Assembly (NCBI GenBank): GCA_964035545.1
Contig: OZ037772.1
Span: 12,336,818 to 12,400,817, forward strand
Direction: 5' to 3'
Source of the DNA: Bugula neritina
Lineage: Eukaryota; Animalia; Bryozoa
Length of the DNA stretch: 64,000 nt
In this document: positions 1,611 to 22,934 of the stretch, in pieces
How the letters are laid out: each line of letters opens with the position of its first letter
Numbering within the stretch: the stretch's first letter is position 1
Program-made: the position numbers and the translations under genes
The notes under the pieces: generated by a model
The model's input: only the letters and a program-made list of their open reading frames with translations
Told to the model about the DNA's origin: nothing
Database searches by the model: none

Positions 1611-4157
1611 ATGTCAGTTGAGAAGGTTTGGGAAAAGCTAAAAGACTACATTATAGAAGGTGATGTGGATAAGTTCAAAGATACACTGACTTCTCTGTCT
1701 GCTGAGGATAGATTGGAAGTACTTTGTATGCAGAATTTCATTTCCTACCAAGGTAAAACAGTCATCAGTACTACAGTAATGCATATAGCAGCAGAAGGAG
1801 GTCATACAGAGACAGTGAAATGTATTCTAGACTCTGTACCAGCAGCTGACCTGTACAAACTACTCACTATACAGGATAGAAATGATAAGTCAGCTGTACA
1901 CAGAGCAGCAGAAAGAGGTCATACAGAGACAGTGAAATGTATTCTAGACTCTGTACCAGCAGCTGACCTGTACAAACTACTCACTATACAGGATAGAAAT
2001 GATAAGTCAGCTGTACACAGAGCAGCAGAAGGAGGTCATGCAGAGACAGTGAAATGTATTCTAGACTCTGTACCAGCAACTGACTTGTACAAACTACTCA
2101 GTATACAGAAAAGGTTTGGTGATACAGCTGTACACAGTGCAGCAGAAAGAGGTCATACAGAGACAGTGAAATGTATTCTAGACTCTCTACCAGCAACTGA
2201 CTTGTACAAACTACTCAGTATACAGAAAAGGTTTGGTGATACAGCTGTACAGAGAGCAGCAGAAGGAGGTCATACAGAGACAGTGAAATGTATTCTAGAC
2301 TGTGTACCAGCAGCTGATTTGTACAAACTACTCAGTATACAGAATAGAAGTGGTGATACAGCTGTACACAGTGCAGCAGAAGTAGTTCATACAGAGACAG
2401 TGAAATGTATTCTAGACTGTGTACCAGCAACTGACTTGTACAAACTACTCAGTACACAGAATGAATATGGTAATACAGCTGTACACAGAGCAGCAGAAGG
2501 AGGTCATTCAGAGACAGTGAAATGTAGTCTAGACTCTGTACCAACAGCTGACTTGTATAAACTACTCAGTATACAGAATCACTCTGGTTATACAGCTGTA
2601 CACAGAGCAACAGAAGAAGGTCATACAGAGACAGTAAAATGTATTCTATACTCTGTACCAGCAGCTGACTTGTACAAACTACTCAATATAAAGAATAAAG
2701 ATGGTAATACAGCTGTACACAGAGCAGCAGAAGGAGGTCATACAGAGACAGTGAAATGTATTCTAGACTCTGTACCAGCAGCTGACTTGTACAATCTACT
2801 CAGTATACAGAGTAGAAGTGGTAATACAGCTGTACACATGAGTGCAGCAGAAAGAGGTCATACAGAGACAGTGAAATGTATTCTGGACTCTGTACCAGCA
2901 GCTGACTTGTATAAACTACTCAGTATACGGAATCACCCTGGTTATACAGCTGTACACAGAGCAACAGAAAGAGGTCATACAGAGACAGTGAAATGTATTC
3001 TAGACTCTGTACCAGCAGCTGACTTGTACAATCTACTCAGTATACAGAGTAGAAGTGGTAATACAGCTGTACAAAGAGCAACAGAAAGAGGTCATACAGA
3101 GACAGTGAAATGTATTCTAGACTGTGTACCAGCAGCTGACTTGTACAATCTACTCAGTATACAGAGTAGAAGTGGTAATACAGCTGTACACAGTGCAGCA
3201 GAAAGAGGTCATACAGAGACAGTGAAATGTATTCTAGACTGTGTACCAGCAACTGACTTGTACAAACTACTCAGTACACAGAATGAATATGGTTATACAG
3301 CTGTACACAGAGCAGCAGAAGGAGGTCATACAGAGACAGTGAAATGTTATATTCTGGACTCTGTACCAGCAGCTGACTTGTATAAACTACTCAGTATACA
3401 GAATCACTCTGGTTATACAGCTGTACACAGTGCAGCAGAAAGAGGTCATACAGAGACAGTGAAATATATTCTAGACTCTGTACCAGCAGCTGACTTGTAC
3501 AAACTACTCAGTATACAGGGTAGAAATGGTTATACAGCTGTACACAGTGCAGCAGAAAGAGGTCATACAGAGACAGTGAAATGTTATATTCTGGACTCTG
3601 TACCAGCAGCTGACTTGTATAAACTACTCAGTATACAGAATCACTCTGGTTATACAGCTGTACACAGTGCAGCAGAAAGAGGTCATACAGAGACAGTGAA
3701 ATGTATTCTAGACTCTGTACCAGCAACTGATTTAATTGATTTGCTCACTCTGCAGAATAATGCTGGTGAAACAGTTATACATATAATCACATTTAATGGT
3801 CATTCAAAACTAATAAAAAGCATAGTTGAAAGAATGTCAGCAGATGAAATGGGAAAGCTTTTCAGCACAAGAAAAAGTGCATCTCATCCATATGCAACCA
3901 GAGAGCTCATCCCCTTTGAAGGTAAGATAGCCATAAGTTCTAAACTAGCAGCTGTTGTTTTAGAGATAAACCTGCACTAGTGTCTGTTATTTAGTGATTT
4001 TTACACTCTATCAGGTTTTGCTTCAGTGGTATATCTAGATATCAATATTTCTTTAATATTTAAGATTTTTGACAATAGTGAAGAGGACAGGAAACAGCTT
4101 TCAAAAATATTCTTGGAATATTTTATTTTAAGCGTTACCAAACATGATAATAAAATG

Positions 4158-4250
<93 letters not shown>

Positions 4251-7200
4251 TATTGATAATTTGTATATTTTATTTGAATTTCGATGGTTGTATAAACAAA
4301 GTAATATATCACAGCAAAATGGCGGGTTATAAAGAGCTTTGTAAATTTAAAGTAAAATCTCTTTTCAAAAGATGAAAGAGTCCAAAGCTTATAGCAGCCT
4401 ACAAAAAAATATTTTCCTAAACTATGCAACATTATTATCTAATTTGAATTATAGAAATACTCGTTCATAATATGTGAAGCAATTGACTCAATTAAGGAGC
4501 TTTTTAAAAAACAGAGTAAAAGCTATTTATATTCAGTCTGAATCTGTTTTAAAGCCAAAAAATAAAAGCCTTCGGATTGGTCTTGGTCTTCCTGCAAAGC
4601 AAATAAATTAAGACAGGACTTTGCTTTCTTATAACTATAGTCTCATCTCATTGTAAAGTTGAATATCAATGGTTGCTTCTGAAAGAAATACTTTAAACTT
4701 TTTGTTCTATACTGCTTTACATGTTTTCATAAAAAACCCTTTGATTGTGTGCAGACATCAATTGCAGAGTTTGCAAAACTTGCATCAGTTACATATACAT
4801 AACTAGATATGCTAGCCAATGCAAACAAAAACATAACAATTTCTGCTTTGTGGAGTTGTTGTACCTCACACTATTCTTGAATATTAGAAGCGCAGGCCTC
4901 GAAGTTGAGGCATGATTTGGGTTTTCAAAATGCTGCCACAGCAGACAGCATTACTGGACCAAAAGAAGGACAAAGAAGTTCTGCTAAGTTTTCTAATAAA
5001 AGTATGATTTTTAACATTTCTATTTCTACTGTAGCCTAGCTATTGCTATAAGCTTAATTATTAACTTTACATGGGTGTTACTCCTCTAGCACTCGCATCC
5101 TCCACTATCTGTTGTCAAATTTTATATTTTATGTTGTGAGTATCTTTACAAAAATATAATCGCCATTCCAAGATTTTCTTACCTGACCTTACTCTCTAAC
5201 CAGAAGGACAACAAAATAACATATTTTTTACAGAGAAACCAGCTCTCAGCATAGCTGACTCTGGATTTGGAAGTCATGCCACAGCAAGCAGCATCACTGG
5301 AATAGAAGAACAAGGAAGAATAGAAGATGTTAGGGTTTCTAATGAAAGTATGATGCACCAAGTTTATATTTCAGCTGTCAGATTATCTTTACGGTTCAAC
5401 GATACTTTTGTTATTTTTATGCATGTGTGCTCCTCTCTTGTACTGACACTATCTATTATGTCATCCTTGCATATTTGATGTTTTAAATATTATTATTGTT
5501 ATAGATTGGCAAACCAACTTTAAAAAAAAGACATTTCTAAGGTCTTTTTCTAATATTTTGTTAATTTCCACAAATCAATTTTTACAGTGAAGCTGCTTAG
5601 TCTTAGCTCATCCGACTCTGAATATGAAACAACAGACTGGGAGACTTTACCAGAAATACAAGGAATAAGCATGGCATCACTTCTTGATGAAAGTATGATT
5701 TACCAAGCTTCTAATTTAATGTTTTGTTGCTATCTCCACATGCATGCAGTGTTGTTCTCTTTTGAACTGACATTGTCCAGCTATCTGTTCTCATTATTGC
5801 ATATTTAATGTTTTAAATATTGTAGTCTGCTAAATTTCCTAGCTTTTATCAAATTTTGCATTTCTAAAATTTCATTAACTAATTTTTTAGCTTTTCACAA
5901 GTTTCTTTTCAACTAGGAGGACATTATTCCCCAATGCAATATACAACTTCCTATAGTCCTTTTGCAAGCTAAAGTCTTTATATCTTATTATTCGTGGTTT
6001 TCTGTTGATTGTTTTCACTTCGTTGCATATATAGCTGTTCTGACAGTGACCGCTAAACATACACGCAGTAGTAACAACTGCAATATTTAAATGGTTTAAC
6101 TTCCTTAGATAGTATAATTGGTTTCTATTACATAAATCAGACGAAATTCCCAATGGTGTAGACAGTAAATATATATGCAAGCTTCTCCAAATTTCTTTTA
6201 ATAAAAATGATTACCAGAGCTATTATATATTATATGGCTGTTGGCTATTTTGTGGCTTTATATCAAATTTGTTTACTGAATTTTTTGGCTAAAGAGCTGT
6301 GACTAATGAACTTCGTTTTAATGCTGACACTTTCACAATTATTGCTTTTCTACTCAATCAACTCTGTTAATCATTTTTTGCACCTGTTTTTAATGCTTGA
6401 AGCAGTTTAATTTAAAAAAATTAGCAATTTTGTTGTTGTCAATGCTTACCTTCAAAAGTTCATTAAAAGTAAATACTTTATCTATTTGTAGCTAAGTTTA
6501 TATATAAGATAAAGTAGCTATATCACATACAGCTCTGATTTTATAAGTAGAACAAAATATTGAATTCTTCAGTAATAAAAATACAAAACAAAGGACAATT
6601 TACTATAATTATGTATTGTATCATGTATGAGCTTGGACTAATTCCTATTTTCTATTTCAATTTTTTATTGTAGTAAATACTAAACTAAGTGCTAATATAA
6701 TGGCAGCTATTGAAACTTAAGCTATATAATGCTAACTTTCTTACAGAATCGGATATAACTGCACCAGCTGACACTGTAACTCAGAACACTGCTGCAGCTG
6801 ATGAAATGGAAGAAAAGTCCATGAGTTTACTAGATAGCAGTGGTGAGATATACAAATCATTAAATCTTTATAATATATGTTATATTATGTTAGGTATTAC
6901 TTTCTTTCATACTGACATTCTTCAGCCATCACTTTGTGTCATCATCATATATTTTGAAAATTGCTTTTTATGTAGTTTCTATAATTATTATATAATGTAT
7001 ATGAATTTAGACAAGTTTCTATTTTCTATTTTAATTTGCTATTGAAGTAATTATTACAAGTGCTAATGTAGGAGACAGCCATTGGGAAGATTTTTGCTTG
7101 TGATGATTAAATTACTTAGACTACAACATTAACTTTCTTACAGAATTGGATATGAGTGCACCAGCTGACACTGTAACCCAGAGCACTGCTGTAGCTGATC

Positions 7201-9584
7201 AAATGGAAGAAGAGTCTATGAGTCTATCAGATAACAATGGTGAGATACAGTGTATTATAATTATTCTAGGTTTTGTTATGTAGGGGATATTTTATTTTAT
7301 ATATTACAGGCATTCTTCAACTATCACTATGTGACCTCATCATATTTTGTTTGCATAATAATTGTTACAAAGTCTAAGAGAAATATTTTAGATTTAAAGC
7401 TAAATTAGTGTTGGTAATTTTTCAATAGCCTATACCTGTTCTCAACATTTGATATGTCAGCTTAGCTGGTTCCAATAACAATTATAAGCAATACTATCAT
7501 AAATAAGGATAGTTATAGTACTAAACAAAGTACAGCAAAGCCAAAATTGCAGACTTCTTTGATTAATCTATAAAAATGAAATTGGTTACTTTTCTTGTAA
7601 ACAAATACTGTGCAGGTTCGTTTTCACTTATTGAAAATTCTTATTAAAAATAGCTTTTCTGCTTGAATCTTATAGGTCATAAATGCTGAGACATAAATCT
7701 TGATTGGGAAATGTATTTTTATTTTATTTAAATGTTTTGTTCGCCATACAAAAACTAATTGTAGAACCTGTGATACTGAACCCTGTAACTGGAGAGTTGT
7801 CTCCAGACGCACCTTATGAACCTGCACCAGAGTCTCTAATGGATGCTATTGAAAGGTGAGTTTGTTATTATTATTGCTATACATATACTACACCACAAAT
7901 TGAGTGATTTTAATAACCTATTGCTTTGACTTTATGTTTATTCTGCACTGAAAAAGTTTCTTAGCTTGTATAAATAATTATGCAACTTTTGGTAATTACT
8001 TTTCTTTTATAGTCTTCTCAATAGTCACAACATCAGCGATGTCACATTTGGACAATTTGCTGACGATTGGAGAAAGATTTTGGTACTAGGTAAAAATGTT
8101 CTAAAAATTCAGTCCGACCTCCAGAGGTACCTGCACAGTGAATCACTCACAAAGTTTGAGATAACATTGAAGAATAACAACAATCCATTTACAATGAAGT
8201 CTCTCAGCTGGGAGAAGGTCCTGACAATTAACAAAAAGAAAGTAGCAAAGAATGAAAAGCTGTGGGGAAACACAGTAAAGCAAACTGTCTGTGAAGCGTT
8301 TGTTATTGCTGAAAGGAAATGTTCTAACAACAATGAGCCATGTAAGAGAGTCTACGCAGTGGCTCCAGCACATCTGGTTTTTGCTGACAAGCAAAATGAA
8401 GAGGCAGCTGCAGCTGATAGCTTTTATATGAAGCAGACCGCTATGCAAGAAAGTATAGCTGAGCTAAACAGTCGCCAACTTGCTGGTCCACCAAAGAAAC
8501 CAGATTCAGCAAATGGCCAGACTAATCAAACTCAAAATGGGCAAGACCATGATGACGTGCCTGATGTTGACAGTGATGATGAAAATCTGTCACTAGTTTC
8601 CAAAGTAAGAACAGAGGTGGAGAGCAAATCTACCAGAAGACAATATTTCATCAGAACCGAAGATCAACACGCTGCCTCTATTGTAGAGTTACAGCATCCA
8701 GTACTGCTTGGCTATCGTCATTGGTACAAGCAAGTGGAGTCTACTTTATCCAGCAGTAACACAACACCAGAGTGTCCAGAACTAAAGTGTGACACAACCA
8801 GGGCACCACACTGTCCTCACAGGTTCATGAATGACTTGGCACTCCTTTTGATCGCCCACAAACATGCTAAGAGCTTTCAAAGTACATTGGATTCAAAGAC
8901 ACAAAAGTTTTTTGAAAAACTAACTTCAAGCAATGTAAATGGAGCTGTGAGACAAGGCACGCTAATTTCAAAAGAACTTTTACAACTCTCTACTGTTTTG
9001 GATCTGCAACAGCTGGCTGGTAGAGAAGTAATGGTTAAGGGAATGCTGGGGAGAGTTGTCAATATTCGACTCAAAGCCAAACCTGGTCAAAGACTGGGAC
9101 AACATATAAAGTTTACGCTTACATCACCAAACACAGCGAGTGCTGAGCAGTAAGTTGAGATCTCATTTTAAAAATACGTATTTTAGATCAGTTAAAGAAA
9201 TTGCTTAGTTCTCCTAGCTAAAGTTAGTAAAACTAATAAAGTACTCAGTGACTGCATTGCAGTTGCTTGTAATATAATTGAGTTTGTCCTTGACATATTA
9301 TTCTTAGGAGCCTGATAAGAGGAGACTGTGGAAGTTTGGTTTATGTCAAGTGTGCAGGTGTGCTCAGACCAGTTGGAATGCTTGTTGGTGAAGCAATCAT
9401 AGGTGATAACGCAACTCCTGCAGGTCCCATCTACCAGGCTGTGGTGCTGAGTCAAGCATTCAAGAACATGGAGTGTGACTATCCACATCAAGTAGCCAAC
9501 ATTGAGCTCTTCTCTCAAGAAAGGTATTCTCAGCTTGCTACAGACGGTCATTTTGATGACTCATCACTTTTCGATGTGTCATAA
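1611..9584 (+). CDS. Spliced gene: ankyrin-repeat array + acidic linker + C-terminal chymotrypsin-fold (PA clan) protease domain with Cys nucleophile, ~1446 aa
   Basis: Exons 1611-3921, 4888-5001, 5234-5347, 5588-5692, 6747-6842, 7144-7239, 7765-7855, 8013-9149, 9308-9584. All introns are GT-AG, phases match (1,1,1,1,1,1,2,2) and the total of 4341 nt is open to TAA at 9582-9584. In-frame TGA at 1548 upstream of ATG 1611. Motifs: VYAVAPAH (His 8371-8373), FMNDLALLLI (Asp 8833-8835), LIRGDCGSLVY (Cys 9327-9329), then PVGMLVG. Extra exons in 3922-4887 and a 24-nt microexon at 6141-6164 are possible but unresolved. Confidence 0.8.
1770..3810 (+). repeat. Coding tandem repeat: 17 near-identical 117-bp (39-aa) ankyrin repeats plus a diverged C-cap
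   Basis: Unit TAVHxAAExGHTETVKCILDSVPAADLYKLLSIQxxxGx resembles the ankyrin TPLHxAAxxGHxxxVxxLL consensus with a 6-aa extension; three 3-nt insertions preserve frame. Confidence 0.92.
4160..4246. repeat. (TA)n microsatellite
   Basis: Pure TA run in intron 1 of the ankyrin-protease gene. Confidence 0.97.
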
Positions 9585-9809
9585 GAACTGAAATGAAAGT
9601 AATGTGAAGAGGGAAATATTTTCATTTGTAAGTTAGAAACAAATTGCCTGCAACCTTATAGTATACAAACAGATGGAAATAACAGCCTGTGTTCTATATA
9701 CACGTCTGCTTTTGTTAGCTTTTGATTATTAATTACTGTTACAAAACACATTCTATACTTAATATACAACCATATCATGTAATCTATGCATATTGTCATA
9801 ATTCTATTA

Positions 9810-17799: not shown

Positions 17800-22934
<5,135 letters not shown>

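What the first reader, a model, noticed from the sequence alone, without database searches (positions are those of the whole stretch)
8013..9584. His-Asp-Cys triad: 3C-like GDCGS nucleophile motif hidden just after a splice junction
Seen: splicing 9149 to 9308 gives ...TASAEQSLIRGDCGSLVYVKCAGVLRPVGMLVGEA; the ORF track starts at 9336 and misses the motif. His is at 8371, Asp at 8833 and Cys (TGT) at 9327. Known: PA-clan proteases with Cys in place of the GDSG serine are characteristic of RNA viruses (picornavirus 3C, potyvirus NIa), whereas cellular ones such as S1, Nal1-like and Ssy5-like use Ser. The GDxGSLV...PVGM pattern resembles Nal1/Ssy5-type cellular proteases. Inference: either an independent Ser-to-Cys switch (TGT is one change from AGT or TCT) or a domesticated viral-type enzyme. 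The S1-pocket His of 3C proteases (GxH) is replaced by GML, so Gln specificity is not expected.
Basis: partly seen in the sequence, partly recalled or inferred. Interest (0 to 1): 0.85.

Follow-up and report, generated by a model that had tools for sequence, protein, structure and literature searches.

The report
Animal trypsin-fold protease using cysteine
The last two exons of this bryozoan gene encode a trypsin-shaped protease domain with cysteine where cellular enzymes of this fold are described as having serine; sister genes in the same genome still have serine, so the switch happened inside one animal gene family, not by capture of a virus gene.

Summary
Exon 8013-9149 joins exon 9308-9584 across a 158-nt GT..AG intron, giving AEQ|SLIRGDCGS. 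His (8371), Asp (8833) and Cys (9327) are in frame. Spliced contigs from three other studies and two Bugula neritina gene models show the same junction.

The domain belongs to a family with no Pfam match. It has at least 19 copies in this 216-Mb bryozoan genome. Every named public relative is a cheilostome bryozoan.

His and Asp are invariant across about 43 sequences. The nucleophile is Cys (TGY) in 14 own-genome copies and Ser (AGY) in 5. A tree separates an all-Ser clade from a nearly all-Cys clade, and both clades include Watersipora proteins. One conserved intron lies just upstream of the motif in both clades.

AlphaFold models of a Cys-type and a Ser-type member both hit rice NAL1 first (Z about 14.3-14.8). 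HtrA/DegS and FAM111A follow at 11.3-12.7, and hepatitis A virus 3C scores 10.4. Likeness to viral 3C is limited to the nucleophile motif.

Best reading: a cellular NAL1-like protease family with a Ser/Cys switch that is probably catalytically active. Activity and triad geometry were not tested. The scan had already found paralogs of this family elsewhere in this genome.

The parts
7767..7855 (+). Upstream coding exon (…EPVILNPVTGELSPDAPYEPAPESLMDAIE) that splices to 8013.
   Evidence: Read joints 7240->7767 and 7852->8013. It matches the linker of P0040. The donor GTGAGT lies at 7856.
8013..9149 (+). Exon A. It encodes a small N-terminal alpha/beta subdomain, the first beta-barrel with His and Asp, and the start of the second barrel.
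   Evidence: It is 94% identical to B. neritina P0040 over 301 columns. Ka/Ks against paralogues is 0.20-0.30.
8371..8373 (+). CAT, the putative catalytic His (PAHL motif; model residue 121).
   Evidence: Invariant in 42 of 42 rows. It sits at the start of a short helix after strand 111-118, in 10-residue blocks of mean pLDDT 96 and 87.
8482..8571 (+). Low-complexity acidic insert between His and Asp, modelled as disordered.
   Evidence: The 10-residue blocks covering model residues 151-190 have mean pLDDT 49-61. Many paralogues have this region as a gap in the alignment.
8773..8820 (+). C-x4-C-x7-C-x-H motif (codons 8773, 8788, 8812, 8818), a candidate structural metal site.
   Evidence: The four residues are conserved in 41/43, 40/43, 43/43 and 42/43 rows. 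The function is untested.
8833..8835 (+). GAC, the putative catalytic Asp (NDLALL motif; model residue 275).
   Evidence: Invariant in 43 of 43 rows. It lies at the start of strand 274-281, in a block of mean pLDDT 96.
9150..9307 (+). 158-nt GT..AG intron placed 6 codons upstream of the nucleophile Cys.
   Evidence: Contigs of X4, X14 and X9 lack it. An acceptor at the same relative position is present in Cys-type and Ser-type paralogues.
9308..9584 (+). Exon B. It encodes the rest of the second barrel, the C-terminal helix and tail, and the stop codon.
   Evidence: There are 25 own-genome matches. Ka/Ks is 0.11-0.58.
9321..9335 (+). GDCGS nucleophile motif; the Cys codon TGT is at 9327-9329 (model residue 387).
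   Evidence: It lies in the loop before strand 390-395, in a block of mean pLDDT 89.

Best explanation
Positions 8013-9584 are the last two exons of a transcribed bryozoan gene. An N-terminal ankyrin-repeat array is joined by a linker to a C-terminal chymotrypsin-fold (PA-clan) protease domain. This domain belongs to an unnamed, bryozoan-restricted multigene family whose nearest solved structure is the plant serine protease NAL1. In one large clade of the family, which includes this gene, the nucleophile codon is TGY (Cys) rather than the AGY (Ser) kept by the other clade. This is a single A/T change, and it happened before Bugula and Watersipora diverged. The proposed mechanism is inferred, not shown. 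The Cys thiol would be activated by His (8371), which is oriented by Asp (8833). It would attack the scissile bond as in viral 3C and TEV proteases, with the oxyanion hole formed by the backbone of G-D-C-G. There is no S1 His, so P1-Gln specificity is not expected. The ankyrin array would select the substrate or ligand.
For: The gene is real and spliced. It is under purifying selection, with Ka/Ks 0.11-0.58. His, Asp and the neighbouring NDxAL and PAH motifs are invariant. Cys is kept in 14 own-genome copies, in Watersipora P0031 and in all 10 public fragments spanning the site, while GDSG is kept in 5 own-genome copies and in P0019 and P0034. All Ser codons are AGY and all Cys codons are TGY, and the upstream intron is shared. 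The tree separates a clade with only Ser among known states from a clade with 15 Cys and 1 Ser, on a branch with 99/96 support. The Cys-type model has pLDDT 83.3 and pTM 0.77, and the Ser-type model has 85.8 and 0.83. NAL1 is the top hit by Foldseek (E 3e-6). It is also top by the exhaustive VIA search: Z 14.3-14.8 with 237-271 residues aligned, against at most 11.9-12.7 for HtrA/DegS and FAM111A and 10.4 for HAV 3C. The top shape match in the Atlas is a Nal1_C cluster. The ankyrin fusion is seen in P0040 and P0043.
Against: No activity data exist. Model coordinates are not exposed, so the His-Asp-Cys distances could not be measured; only secondary-structure context and offsets relative to NAL1's H234/D291/S385 agree. 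No sequence method links the family to NAL1: the PF25819 HMM and other Pfam models find nothing, PDB profile searches find nothing, and a profile search of 5.8 billion proteins returns only family members. NAL1's margin over other PA proteases is only 1.6-3 Z units. The tree is unrooted, so Ser-to-Cys is inferred from Ser in all structural neighbours. One copy has GHCG and one has GQSG, so some members may be inactive.
Confidence: 0.72

Rival explanations
1. The domain is a pseudoprotease. It keeps the fold and works as a binding or scaffolding module, and the Cys has no catalytic role.
For: Inactive PA-fold paralogues are common; haptoglobin, HGF and the scabies-mite SMIPPs are among the structural hits. 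Some family copies have altered motifs, GHCG and GQSG. No Pfam protease model matches.
Against: His, Asp and the G-D-x-G frame are invariant or nearly so over about 43 divergent rows. Only Ser or Cys, the two competent nucleophiles, ever occupies the nucleophile position. Pseudoproteases usually lose triad residues unevenly.
Confidence: 0.15
2. The domain is a single-turnover self-processing domain. It cuts its own chain, for example to release the ankyrin array, rather than acting on other proteins.
For: The domain sits at the C-terminus after a long flexible linker, and it contains a disordered acidic insert. This rests on the architecture alone.
Against: No conserved cleavage motif was looked for or found. 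NAL1, the nearest structure, cleaves other proteins (PMC12012508).
Confidence: 0.08
3. The domain is a domesticated 3C-like protease captured from a picorna-like RNA virus.
For: It has a Cys nucleophile in GDCGS. A picorna-like IMG/VR contig carries the identical 10-mer GDCGSLVYVK. Foldseek finds picorna-like polyproteins in BFVD at E 7e-5 and weaker.
Against: The viral hit was found by searching for that peptide. Profile alignment then extends over only 15 columns and BLASTP over 54 residues. The 3C GxH His is absent. NAL1 and cellular Ser proteases score higher. Ser-type paralogues share the same intron position. The gene has several exons and an ankyrin array.
Confidence: 0.04

Closest known systems
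Rice NARROW LEAF 1 (NAL1), PDB 7Y77/8PMG/8PN2; Pfam Nal1_C PF25819
   Same: NAL1 is the best structural match for both the Cys-type and the Ser-type family models: Z 14.3-14.8, 237-271 residues aligned, 12-17% identity. For the Ser-type model, and for one NAL1 chain with the Cys-type model, the match extends into the small domain ahead of the protease. Both are intracellular-type proteins with a His-Asp-nucleophile order, and the spacing from the nucleophile to the C-terminal end of the alignment is similar.
   Different: No sequence method detects the relationship. This gene has Cys, whereas NAL1 has Ser385 (PMC12012508). It also carries an insert of about 100 residues between His and Asp, a C-x4-C-x7-C-x-H motif and an ankyrin array. 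Whether it forms a hexameric cage was not examined.
Picornavirus 3C, potyvirus NIa and norovirus 3C-like cysteine proteases (MEROPS subclan PA(C))
   Same: They share the chymotrypsin fold with a Cys nucleophile in a G-x-C-G motif. One picorna-like contig has the identical GDCGSLVYVK.
   Different: They score lower structurally (HAV 3C Z 10.4; SVV 3C Foldseek E 2e-3). This gene has no GxH S1 His, matches no Pfam C3/C4/C24/C30/C37 model, is not part of a polyprotein, and is a spliced cellular gene with Ser-type paralogues.
HtrA/DegS/Deg and FAM111A cellular serine proteases
   Same: They share the PA-clan fold at Z 11.3-12.7 and are intracellular or periplasmic regulatory proteases.
   Different: They have a Ser nucleophile and PDZ or other accessory domains. 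Fewer residues align (160-200), and no sequence match was found.

Membership tests
PA clan (chymotrypsin-fold) peptidases | Two six-stranded beta-barrels. | tested here: met
   The models have pLDDT 83.3 and 85.8. More than 100 PA-clan chains score Z 8 or above, and they make up all the top hits.
PA clan (chymotrypsin-fold) peptidases | Triad in the order His, Asp, nucleophile, each in its canonical structural context. | tested here: met
   His121 lies at the start of a helix after a strand (PAH). Asp275 lies at the start of a strand (NDLALL). Cys387 lies in the G-D-C-G loop before a strand.
PA clan (chymotrypsin-fold) peptidases | Side chains of the triad juxtaposed in three dimensions. | not testable with these tools
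   Structure prediction returns no coordinates and fold search returns only ranges. The offsets to NAL1's H234/D291/S385 are compatible, but this is indirect.
PA clan (chymotrypsin-fold) peptidases | Peptidase activity. | not testable with these tools
   This needs a biochemical assay.
NAL1-like (Pfam Nal1_C, PF25819) | Match to the family HMM above its cut-off. | tested here: not met
   There is no Pfam hit on either exon or on P0040, P0019, P0031 or P0034 at E up to 10. PF25819 finds nothing in the whole genome, though its control genomes were silent too.
NAL1-like (Pfam Nal1_C, PF25819) | Closest structure, including the domain ahead of the protease. | tested here: met
   NAL1 is the top hit in four searches with two models. 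The Ser-type model aligns 1-377 to NAL1 114-447. The top shape match in the Atlas is a Nal1_C cluster.
NAL1-like (Pfam Nal1_C, PF25819) | Serine nucleophile. | tested here: not met
   This gene has TGT (Cys). Ser is kept in 5 own-genome paralogues and in P0019 and P0034.
Viral 3C / 3C-like cysteine proteases | Cys nucleophile in G-x-C-G. | tested here: met
   GDCGS lies at 9321-9335.
Viral 3C / 3C-like cysteine proteases | GxH motif supplying the S1 His. | tested here: not met
   The window has PVGMLVGEA where the viral contig has LVGMHVAG. Neither register gives a His.
Viral 3C / 3C-like cysteine proteases | Part of a viral polyprotein beside helicase or RdRp, with a match to the family HMM. 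| tested here: not met
   It is a spliced animal gene with an ankyrin array, a conserved intron and at least 19 paralogues. No Peptidase_C3/C4/C24/C30/C37 model hits it.
S1 trypsin (PF00089), Ssy5 (S64) | Match to the family HMM. | tested here: not met
   There is no Pfam hit at E up to 10.

The most novel reading that the evidence does not exclude
This is an active cellular (animal) cysteine protease family with the chymotrypsin fold. Ser-type and Cys-type paralogues are both kept under selection in the same genome and differ by an AGY/TGY change. Published accounts describe this chemistry only in viruses. It would be a natural system for studying how a catalytic nucleophile is exchanged. Fused to variable ankyrin arrays, the family may also be a bryozoan-specific intracellular sensor-effector system.
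Probability: 0.5. Interest if true: 0.78.

Novelty: new variant of a known kind. Interest (0 to 1): 0.66.

Why it matters
Published overviews state that cellular PA-clan proteases use serine and that cysteine versions occur in viruses (PMC4576821). This family offers living Ser-type and Cys-type sisters with the same fold, the same intron and the same genome, separated by one base at the nucleophile codon. That makes the old question of how a catalytic nucleophile can be exchanged without passing through a dead enzyme directly testable. From my own knowledge, Brenner argued in 1988 that Cys (TGY) could bridge the AGY and TCN serine codons. The family also extends NAL1-like architecture to animals and defines an unnamed family that Pfam does not cover.

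Tried and rejected
- **Pfam:** no protease family matched either exon or four full-length relatives.
- **PDB sequence profiles:** the whole domain and exon B gave only chance hits.
- **PF25819 (Nal1_C) over the whole genome:** nothing matched, and the control genomes were silent too, so this is uninformative.
- **Atlas search by features on exon A:** no usable hit. The search on the public orthologue gave a mixed list of PA-clan clusters, including a mostly molluscan cluster partly annotated Nal1_C. This is a lead only.
- **Viral origin:** considered and rejected.
- **Single versus double switch:** the best tree needs two changes, but the AU test does not reject a single Cys clade (p 0.347), so the number of switches stays open.
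- **Metagenome contigs for P0012 and P0008:** both end inside the intron, so their nucleophile is unknown.
- **Literature:** searches for a described cellular PA-clan cysteine protease, for animal NAL1 homologues and for this bryozoan family found nothing relevant.
- **Joining the exons:** the window's two exons were never joined. Folding therefore used the public orthologue, not the window's own product.

Full report
**Observation**

The sequence shows an acceptor AG at 8011-8012 and exon A at 8013-9149. The donor GTAAGT follows at 9150, and an acceptor AG lies at 9306-9307. Exon B runs from 9308 to the TAA stop at 9582-9584. I translated the exons separately. They give ...TSPNTASAE and SLIRGDCGSLVYVKCAGVLRPVGMLVGEA..., and the split codon CA|G supplies Gln. 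CAT 8371 (His), GAC 8833 (Asp) and TGT 9327 (Cys) are all in frame. The mechanical ORF list starts at 9336 and does miss the motif.

**The gene is real, spliced and transcribed**

- A scan of 1.84 billion representative proteins with exon A gave only 39 hits.
- The best hits are Bugula neritina KAF6034933.1 (462 aa, 91% identical) and its cluster mate KAF6034931.1 (1071 aa). Both read ...SAEQSLIRGDCGS across the junction.
- The 1071-aa protein is an ankyrin array, then a linker, then this domain (Pfam ANK hits). Its linker matches the window's small exons.
- Contigs of four public runs were laid on 5400-9800. X4 and X14, from two studies, skip exactly the 158-nt intron. Two contigs of the RNA-Seq run X9 begin at 9308 and are preceded by the exon-A end of the B. 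neritina orthologue. The upstream joint 7852->8013 is also seen.
- The DNA contig of X1 covers 8409-9452 without a difference, but it is probably the assembly's own source.
- Only contigs, not raw reads, were available, so rare variants cannot be excluded.

**A multigene family**

- The window's own genome is 216 Mb in 321 contigs. It has 25 exon-B matches and 18 exon-A matches.
- I paired the exons at 19 loci without joining them.
- His (PAH) and Asp (NDxAL) are invariant in 42 and 43 rows.
- The nucleophile is Cys in 14 own-genome copies. One of these has GHCG.
- It is Ser in 5 copies, on contigs C2 (31.27 Mb), C6 (8.745 and 8.740 Mb), C7 (11.98 Mb) and C3 (21.65 Mb). The C3 copy reads GQSG.
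- All ten public fragments that span the site have GDCG.
- Watersipora subatra has both states: XP_067947559.1 has GDSG and XP_067949544.1 has GDCG.
- Every Ser codon is AGY and every Cys codon is TGY. A polypyrimidine-AG acceptor lies 4-6 codons upstream of the motif in Cys-type and Ser-type copies alike.
- Ka/Ks between paralogues is 0.20-0.30 in exon A and 0.11-0.58 in exon B.

**Phylogeny**

A maximum-likelihood tree of 52 exon-A rows has a branch with 99/96 support. On one side is a 9-row clade in which all 5 known states are Ser. On the other is a 43-row clade with 15 Cys and 1 Ser. Both clades contain Watersipora and Bugula-type sequences. The switch therefore predates the split of two cheilostome superfamilies. 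The best tree needs two changes. An AU test does not reject a single Cys clade (p 0.347). The tree is unrooted, so Ser as the ancestral state is inferred from Ser in all structural neighbours.

**Fold**

- Neither Pfam nor PDB sequence profiles recognise the domain.
- An AlphaFold2 model of P0040 residues 601-1071 was built on a 58-row alignment. This segment is 94% identical to the window's exon A. The model has mean pLDDT 83.3 and pTM 0.77.
- Foldseek against the PDB ranks rice NAL1 first (E 3e-6). Seneca Valley virus 3C follows at 2e-3, with factor IXa, thrombin and norovirus protease at about 1e-2 or better.
- VIA-align gives NAL1 Z 14.8 (237 aligned, rmsd 3.9 A, 15% identity). DegS/HtrA/Deg score about 11.9 and FAM111A scores 11.3.
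- The exhaustive search of 48,161 chains agrees: NAL1 14.3 and 14.0, HtrA3 11.7, HAV 3C 10.4.
- A second model, of the Ser-type member P0034, has pLDDT 85.8 and pTM 0.83. It also hits NAL1 first: Z 14.3 with 271 residues aligned, model 1-377 to NAL1 114-447. That alignment includes the small N-terminal subdomain. FAM111A and DegS follow at 12.7.
- The top shape match in the ESM Atlas is a bacterial Nal1_C cluster.
- In the model, His121 starts a short helix after a strand, Asp275 starts a strand, and Cys387 lies in the loop before a strand. These are the canonical PA-clan positions, and local pLDDT is 87-96.
- Coordinates are not exposed, so triad distances were not measured.

**Relation to viruses**

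BFVD hits to picorna-like polyproteins are weaker, at E 7e-5 and above. A peptide-pattern scan of IMG/VR found one picorna-like contig whose 3C region carries the identical GDCGSLVYVK, followed by GMH. Profile alignment covers only 15 columns and BLASTP only 54 residues. The 3C likeness is therefore real at motif level but does not extend to the domain.

**Relation to NAL1**

The relation is structural only. The Nal1_C HMM finds nothing in this genome, though its control genomes were also silent. A profile search of 5.8 billion proteins returns only family members. I therefore describe the family as NAL1-like in architecture. I do not file it as a member of Pfam Nal1_C.

**Mechanism**

The shown parts are the gene, the splice, the fold class, the conserved triad residues, the Ser/Cys distribution and purifying selection. 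The inferred part is thiol catalysis by Cys, activated by His and Asp. The invariance of His and Asp supports it. So does the fact that only the two competent nucleophiles ever occupy the site. A pseudoprotease, a self-processing domain and viral capture are the rivals.

**Comparison with what is known**

A published overview states that cellular PA-clan proteases use serine and that both types occur in viruses (PMC4576821). NAL1's triad is H234/D291/S385 (PMC12012508). My literature searches found no description of this family. The scan's earlier notes describe paralogues of the same family elsewhere on this contig and reached the same reading. I confirmed those loci independently as the C8 paralogues at 5.205, 8.85 and 12.80 Mb.

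Noticed in passing
window 8773-8820: A nearly invariant C-x4-C-x7-C-x-H motif lies immediately upstream of the catalytic Asp (40-43 of 43 rows). It may be a structural zinc site, as some viral PA-clan proteases have one elsewhere in the fold.
   Followed up: partly
L041:10-2886 (IMGVR_UViG_3300006378_000180): A picorna-like polyprotein (3C plus RdRp) whose protease carries the identical 10-mer GDCGSLVYVK. The likeness ends outside the motif.
   Followed up: yes
L042:945-2078, L043, L044: The Ser-type relative P0034 (377 aa) is one uninterrupted ORF on metagenome scaffolds, so the intron upstream of the nucleophile is absent there. The source organism was not identified.
   Followed up: partly
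window 19276-19557 (minus strand): An exon of a classical S1 trypsin-type serine protease (…[12 protein letters not shown]…CWVTGWGDS) lies about 10 kb downstream. It is an ordinary family member and unrelated to this gene.
   Followed up: no
window 1611-3980: A single 789-codon open frame of ankyrin repeats with an unusually long unit of about 42 residues (…GHTETVKCILDSVPAADLYKLLSIQ…). By homology to P0040 it is the N-terminal part of the same gene.
   Followed up: partly
window 17916-18347 and 19718-20400: A 39-bp tandem repeat, read as [13 protein letters not shown] units on the minus strand, and a long (GA/CT)n microsatellite.
   Followed up: no
L029 / L012 (G000:C6:10.83 Mb) and L034 (G000:C3:21.65 Mb): These paralogues have an altered residue before the nucleophile (GHCG and GQSG in place of GD[CS]G). 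They may be diverged or inactive members.
   Followed up: no
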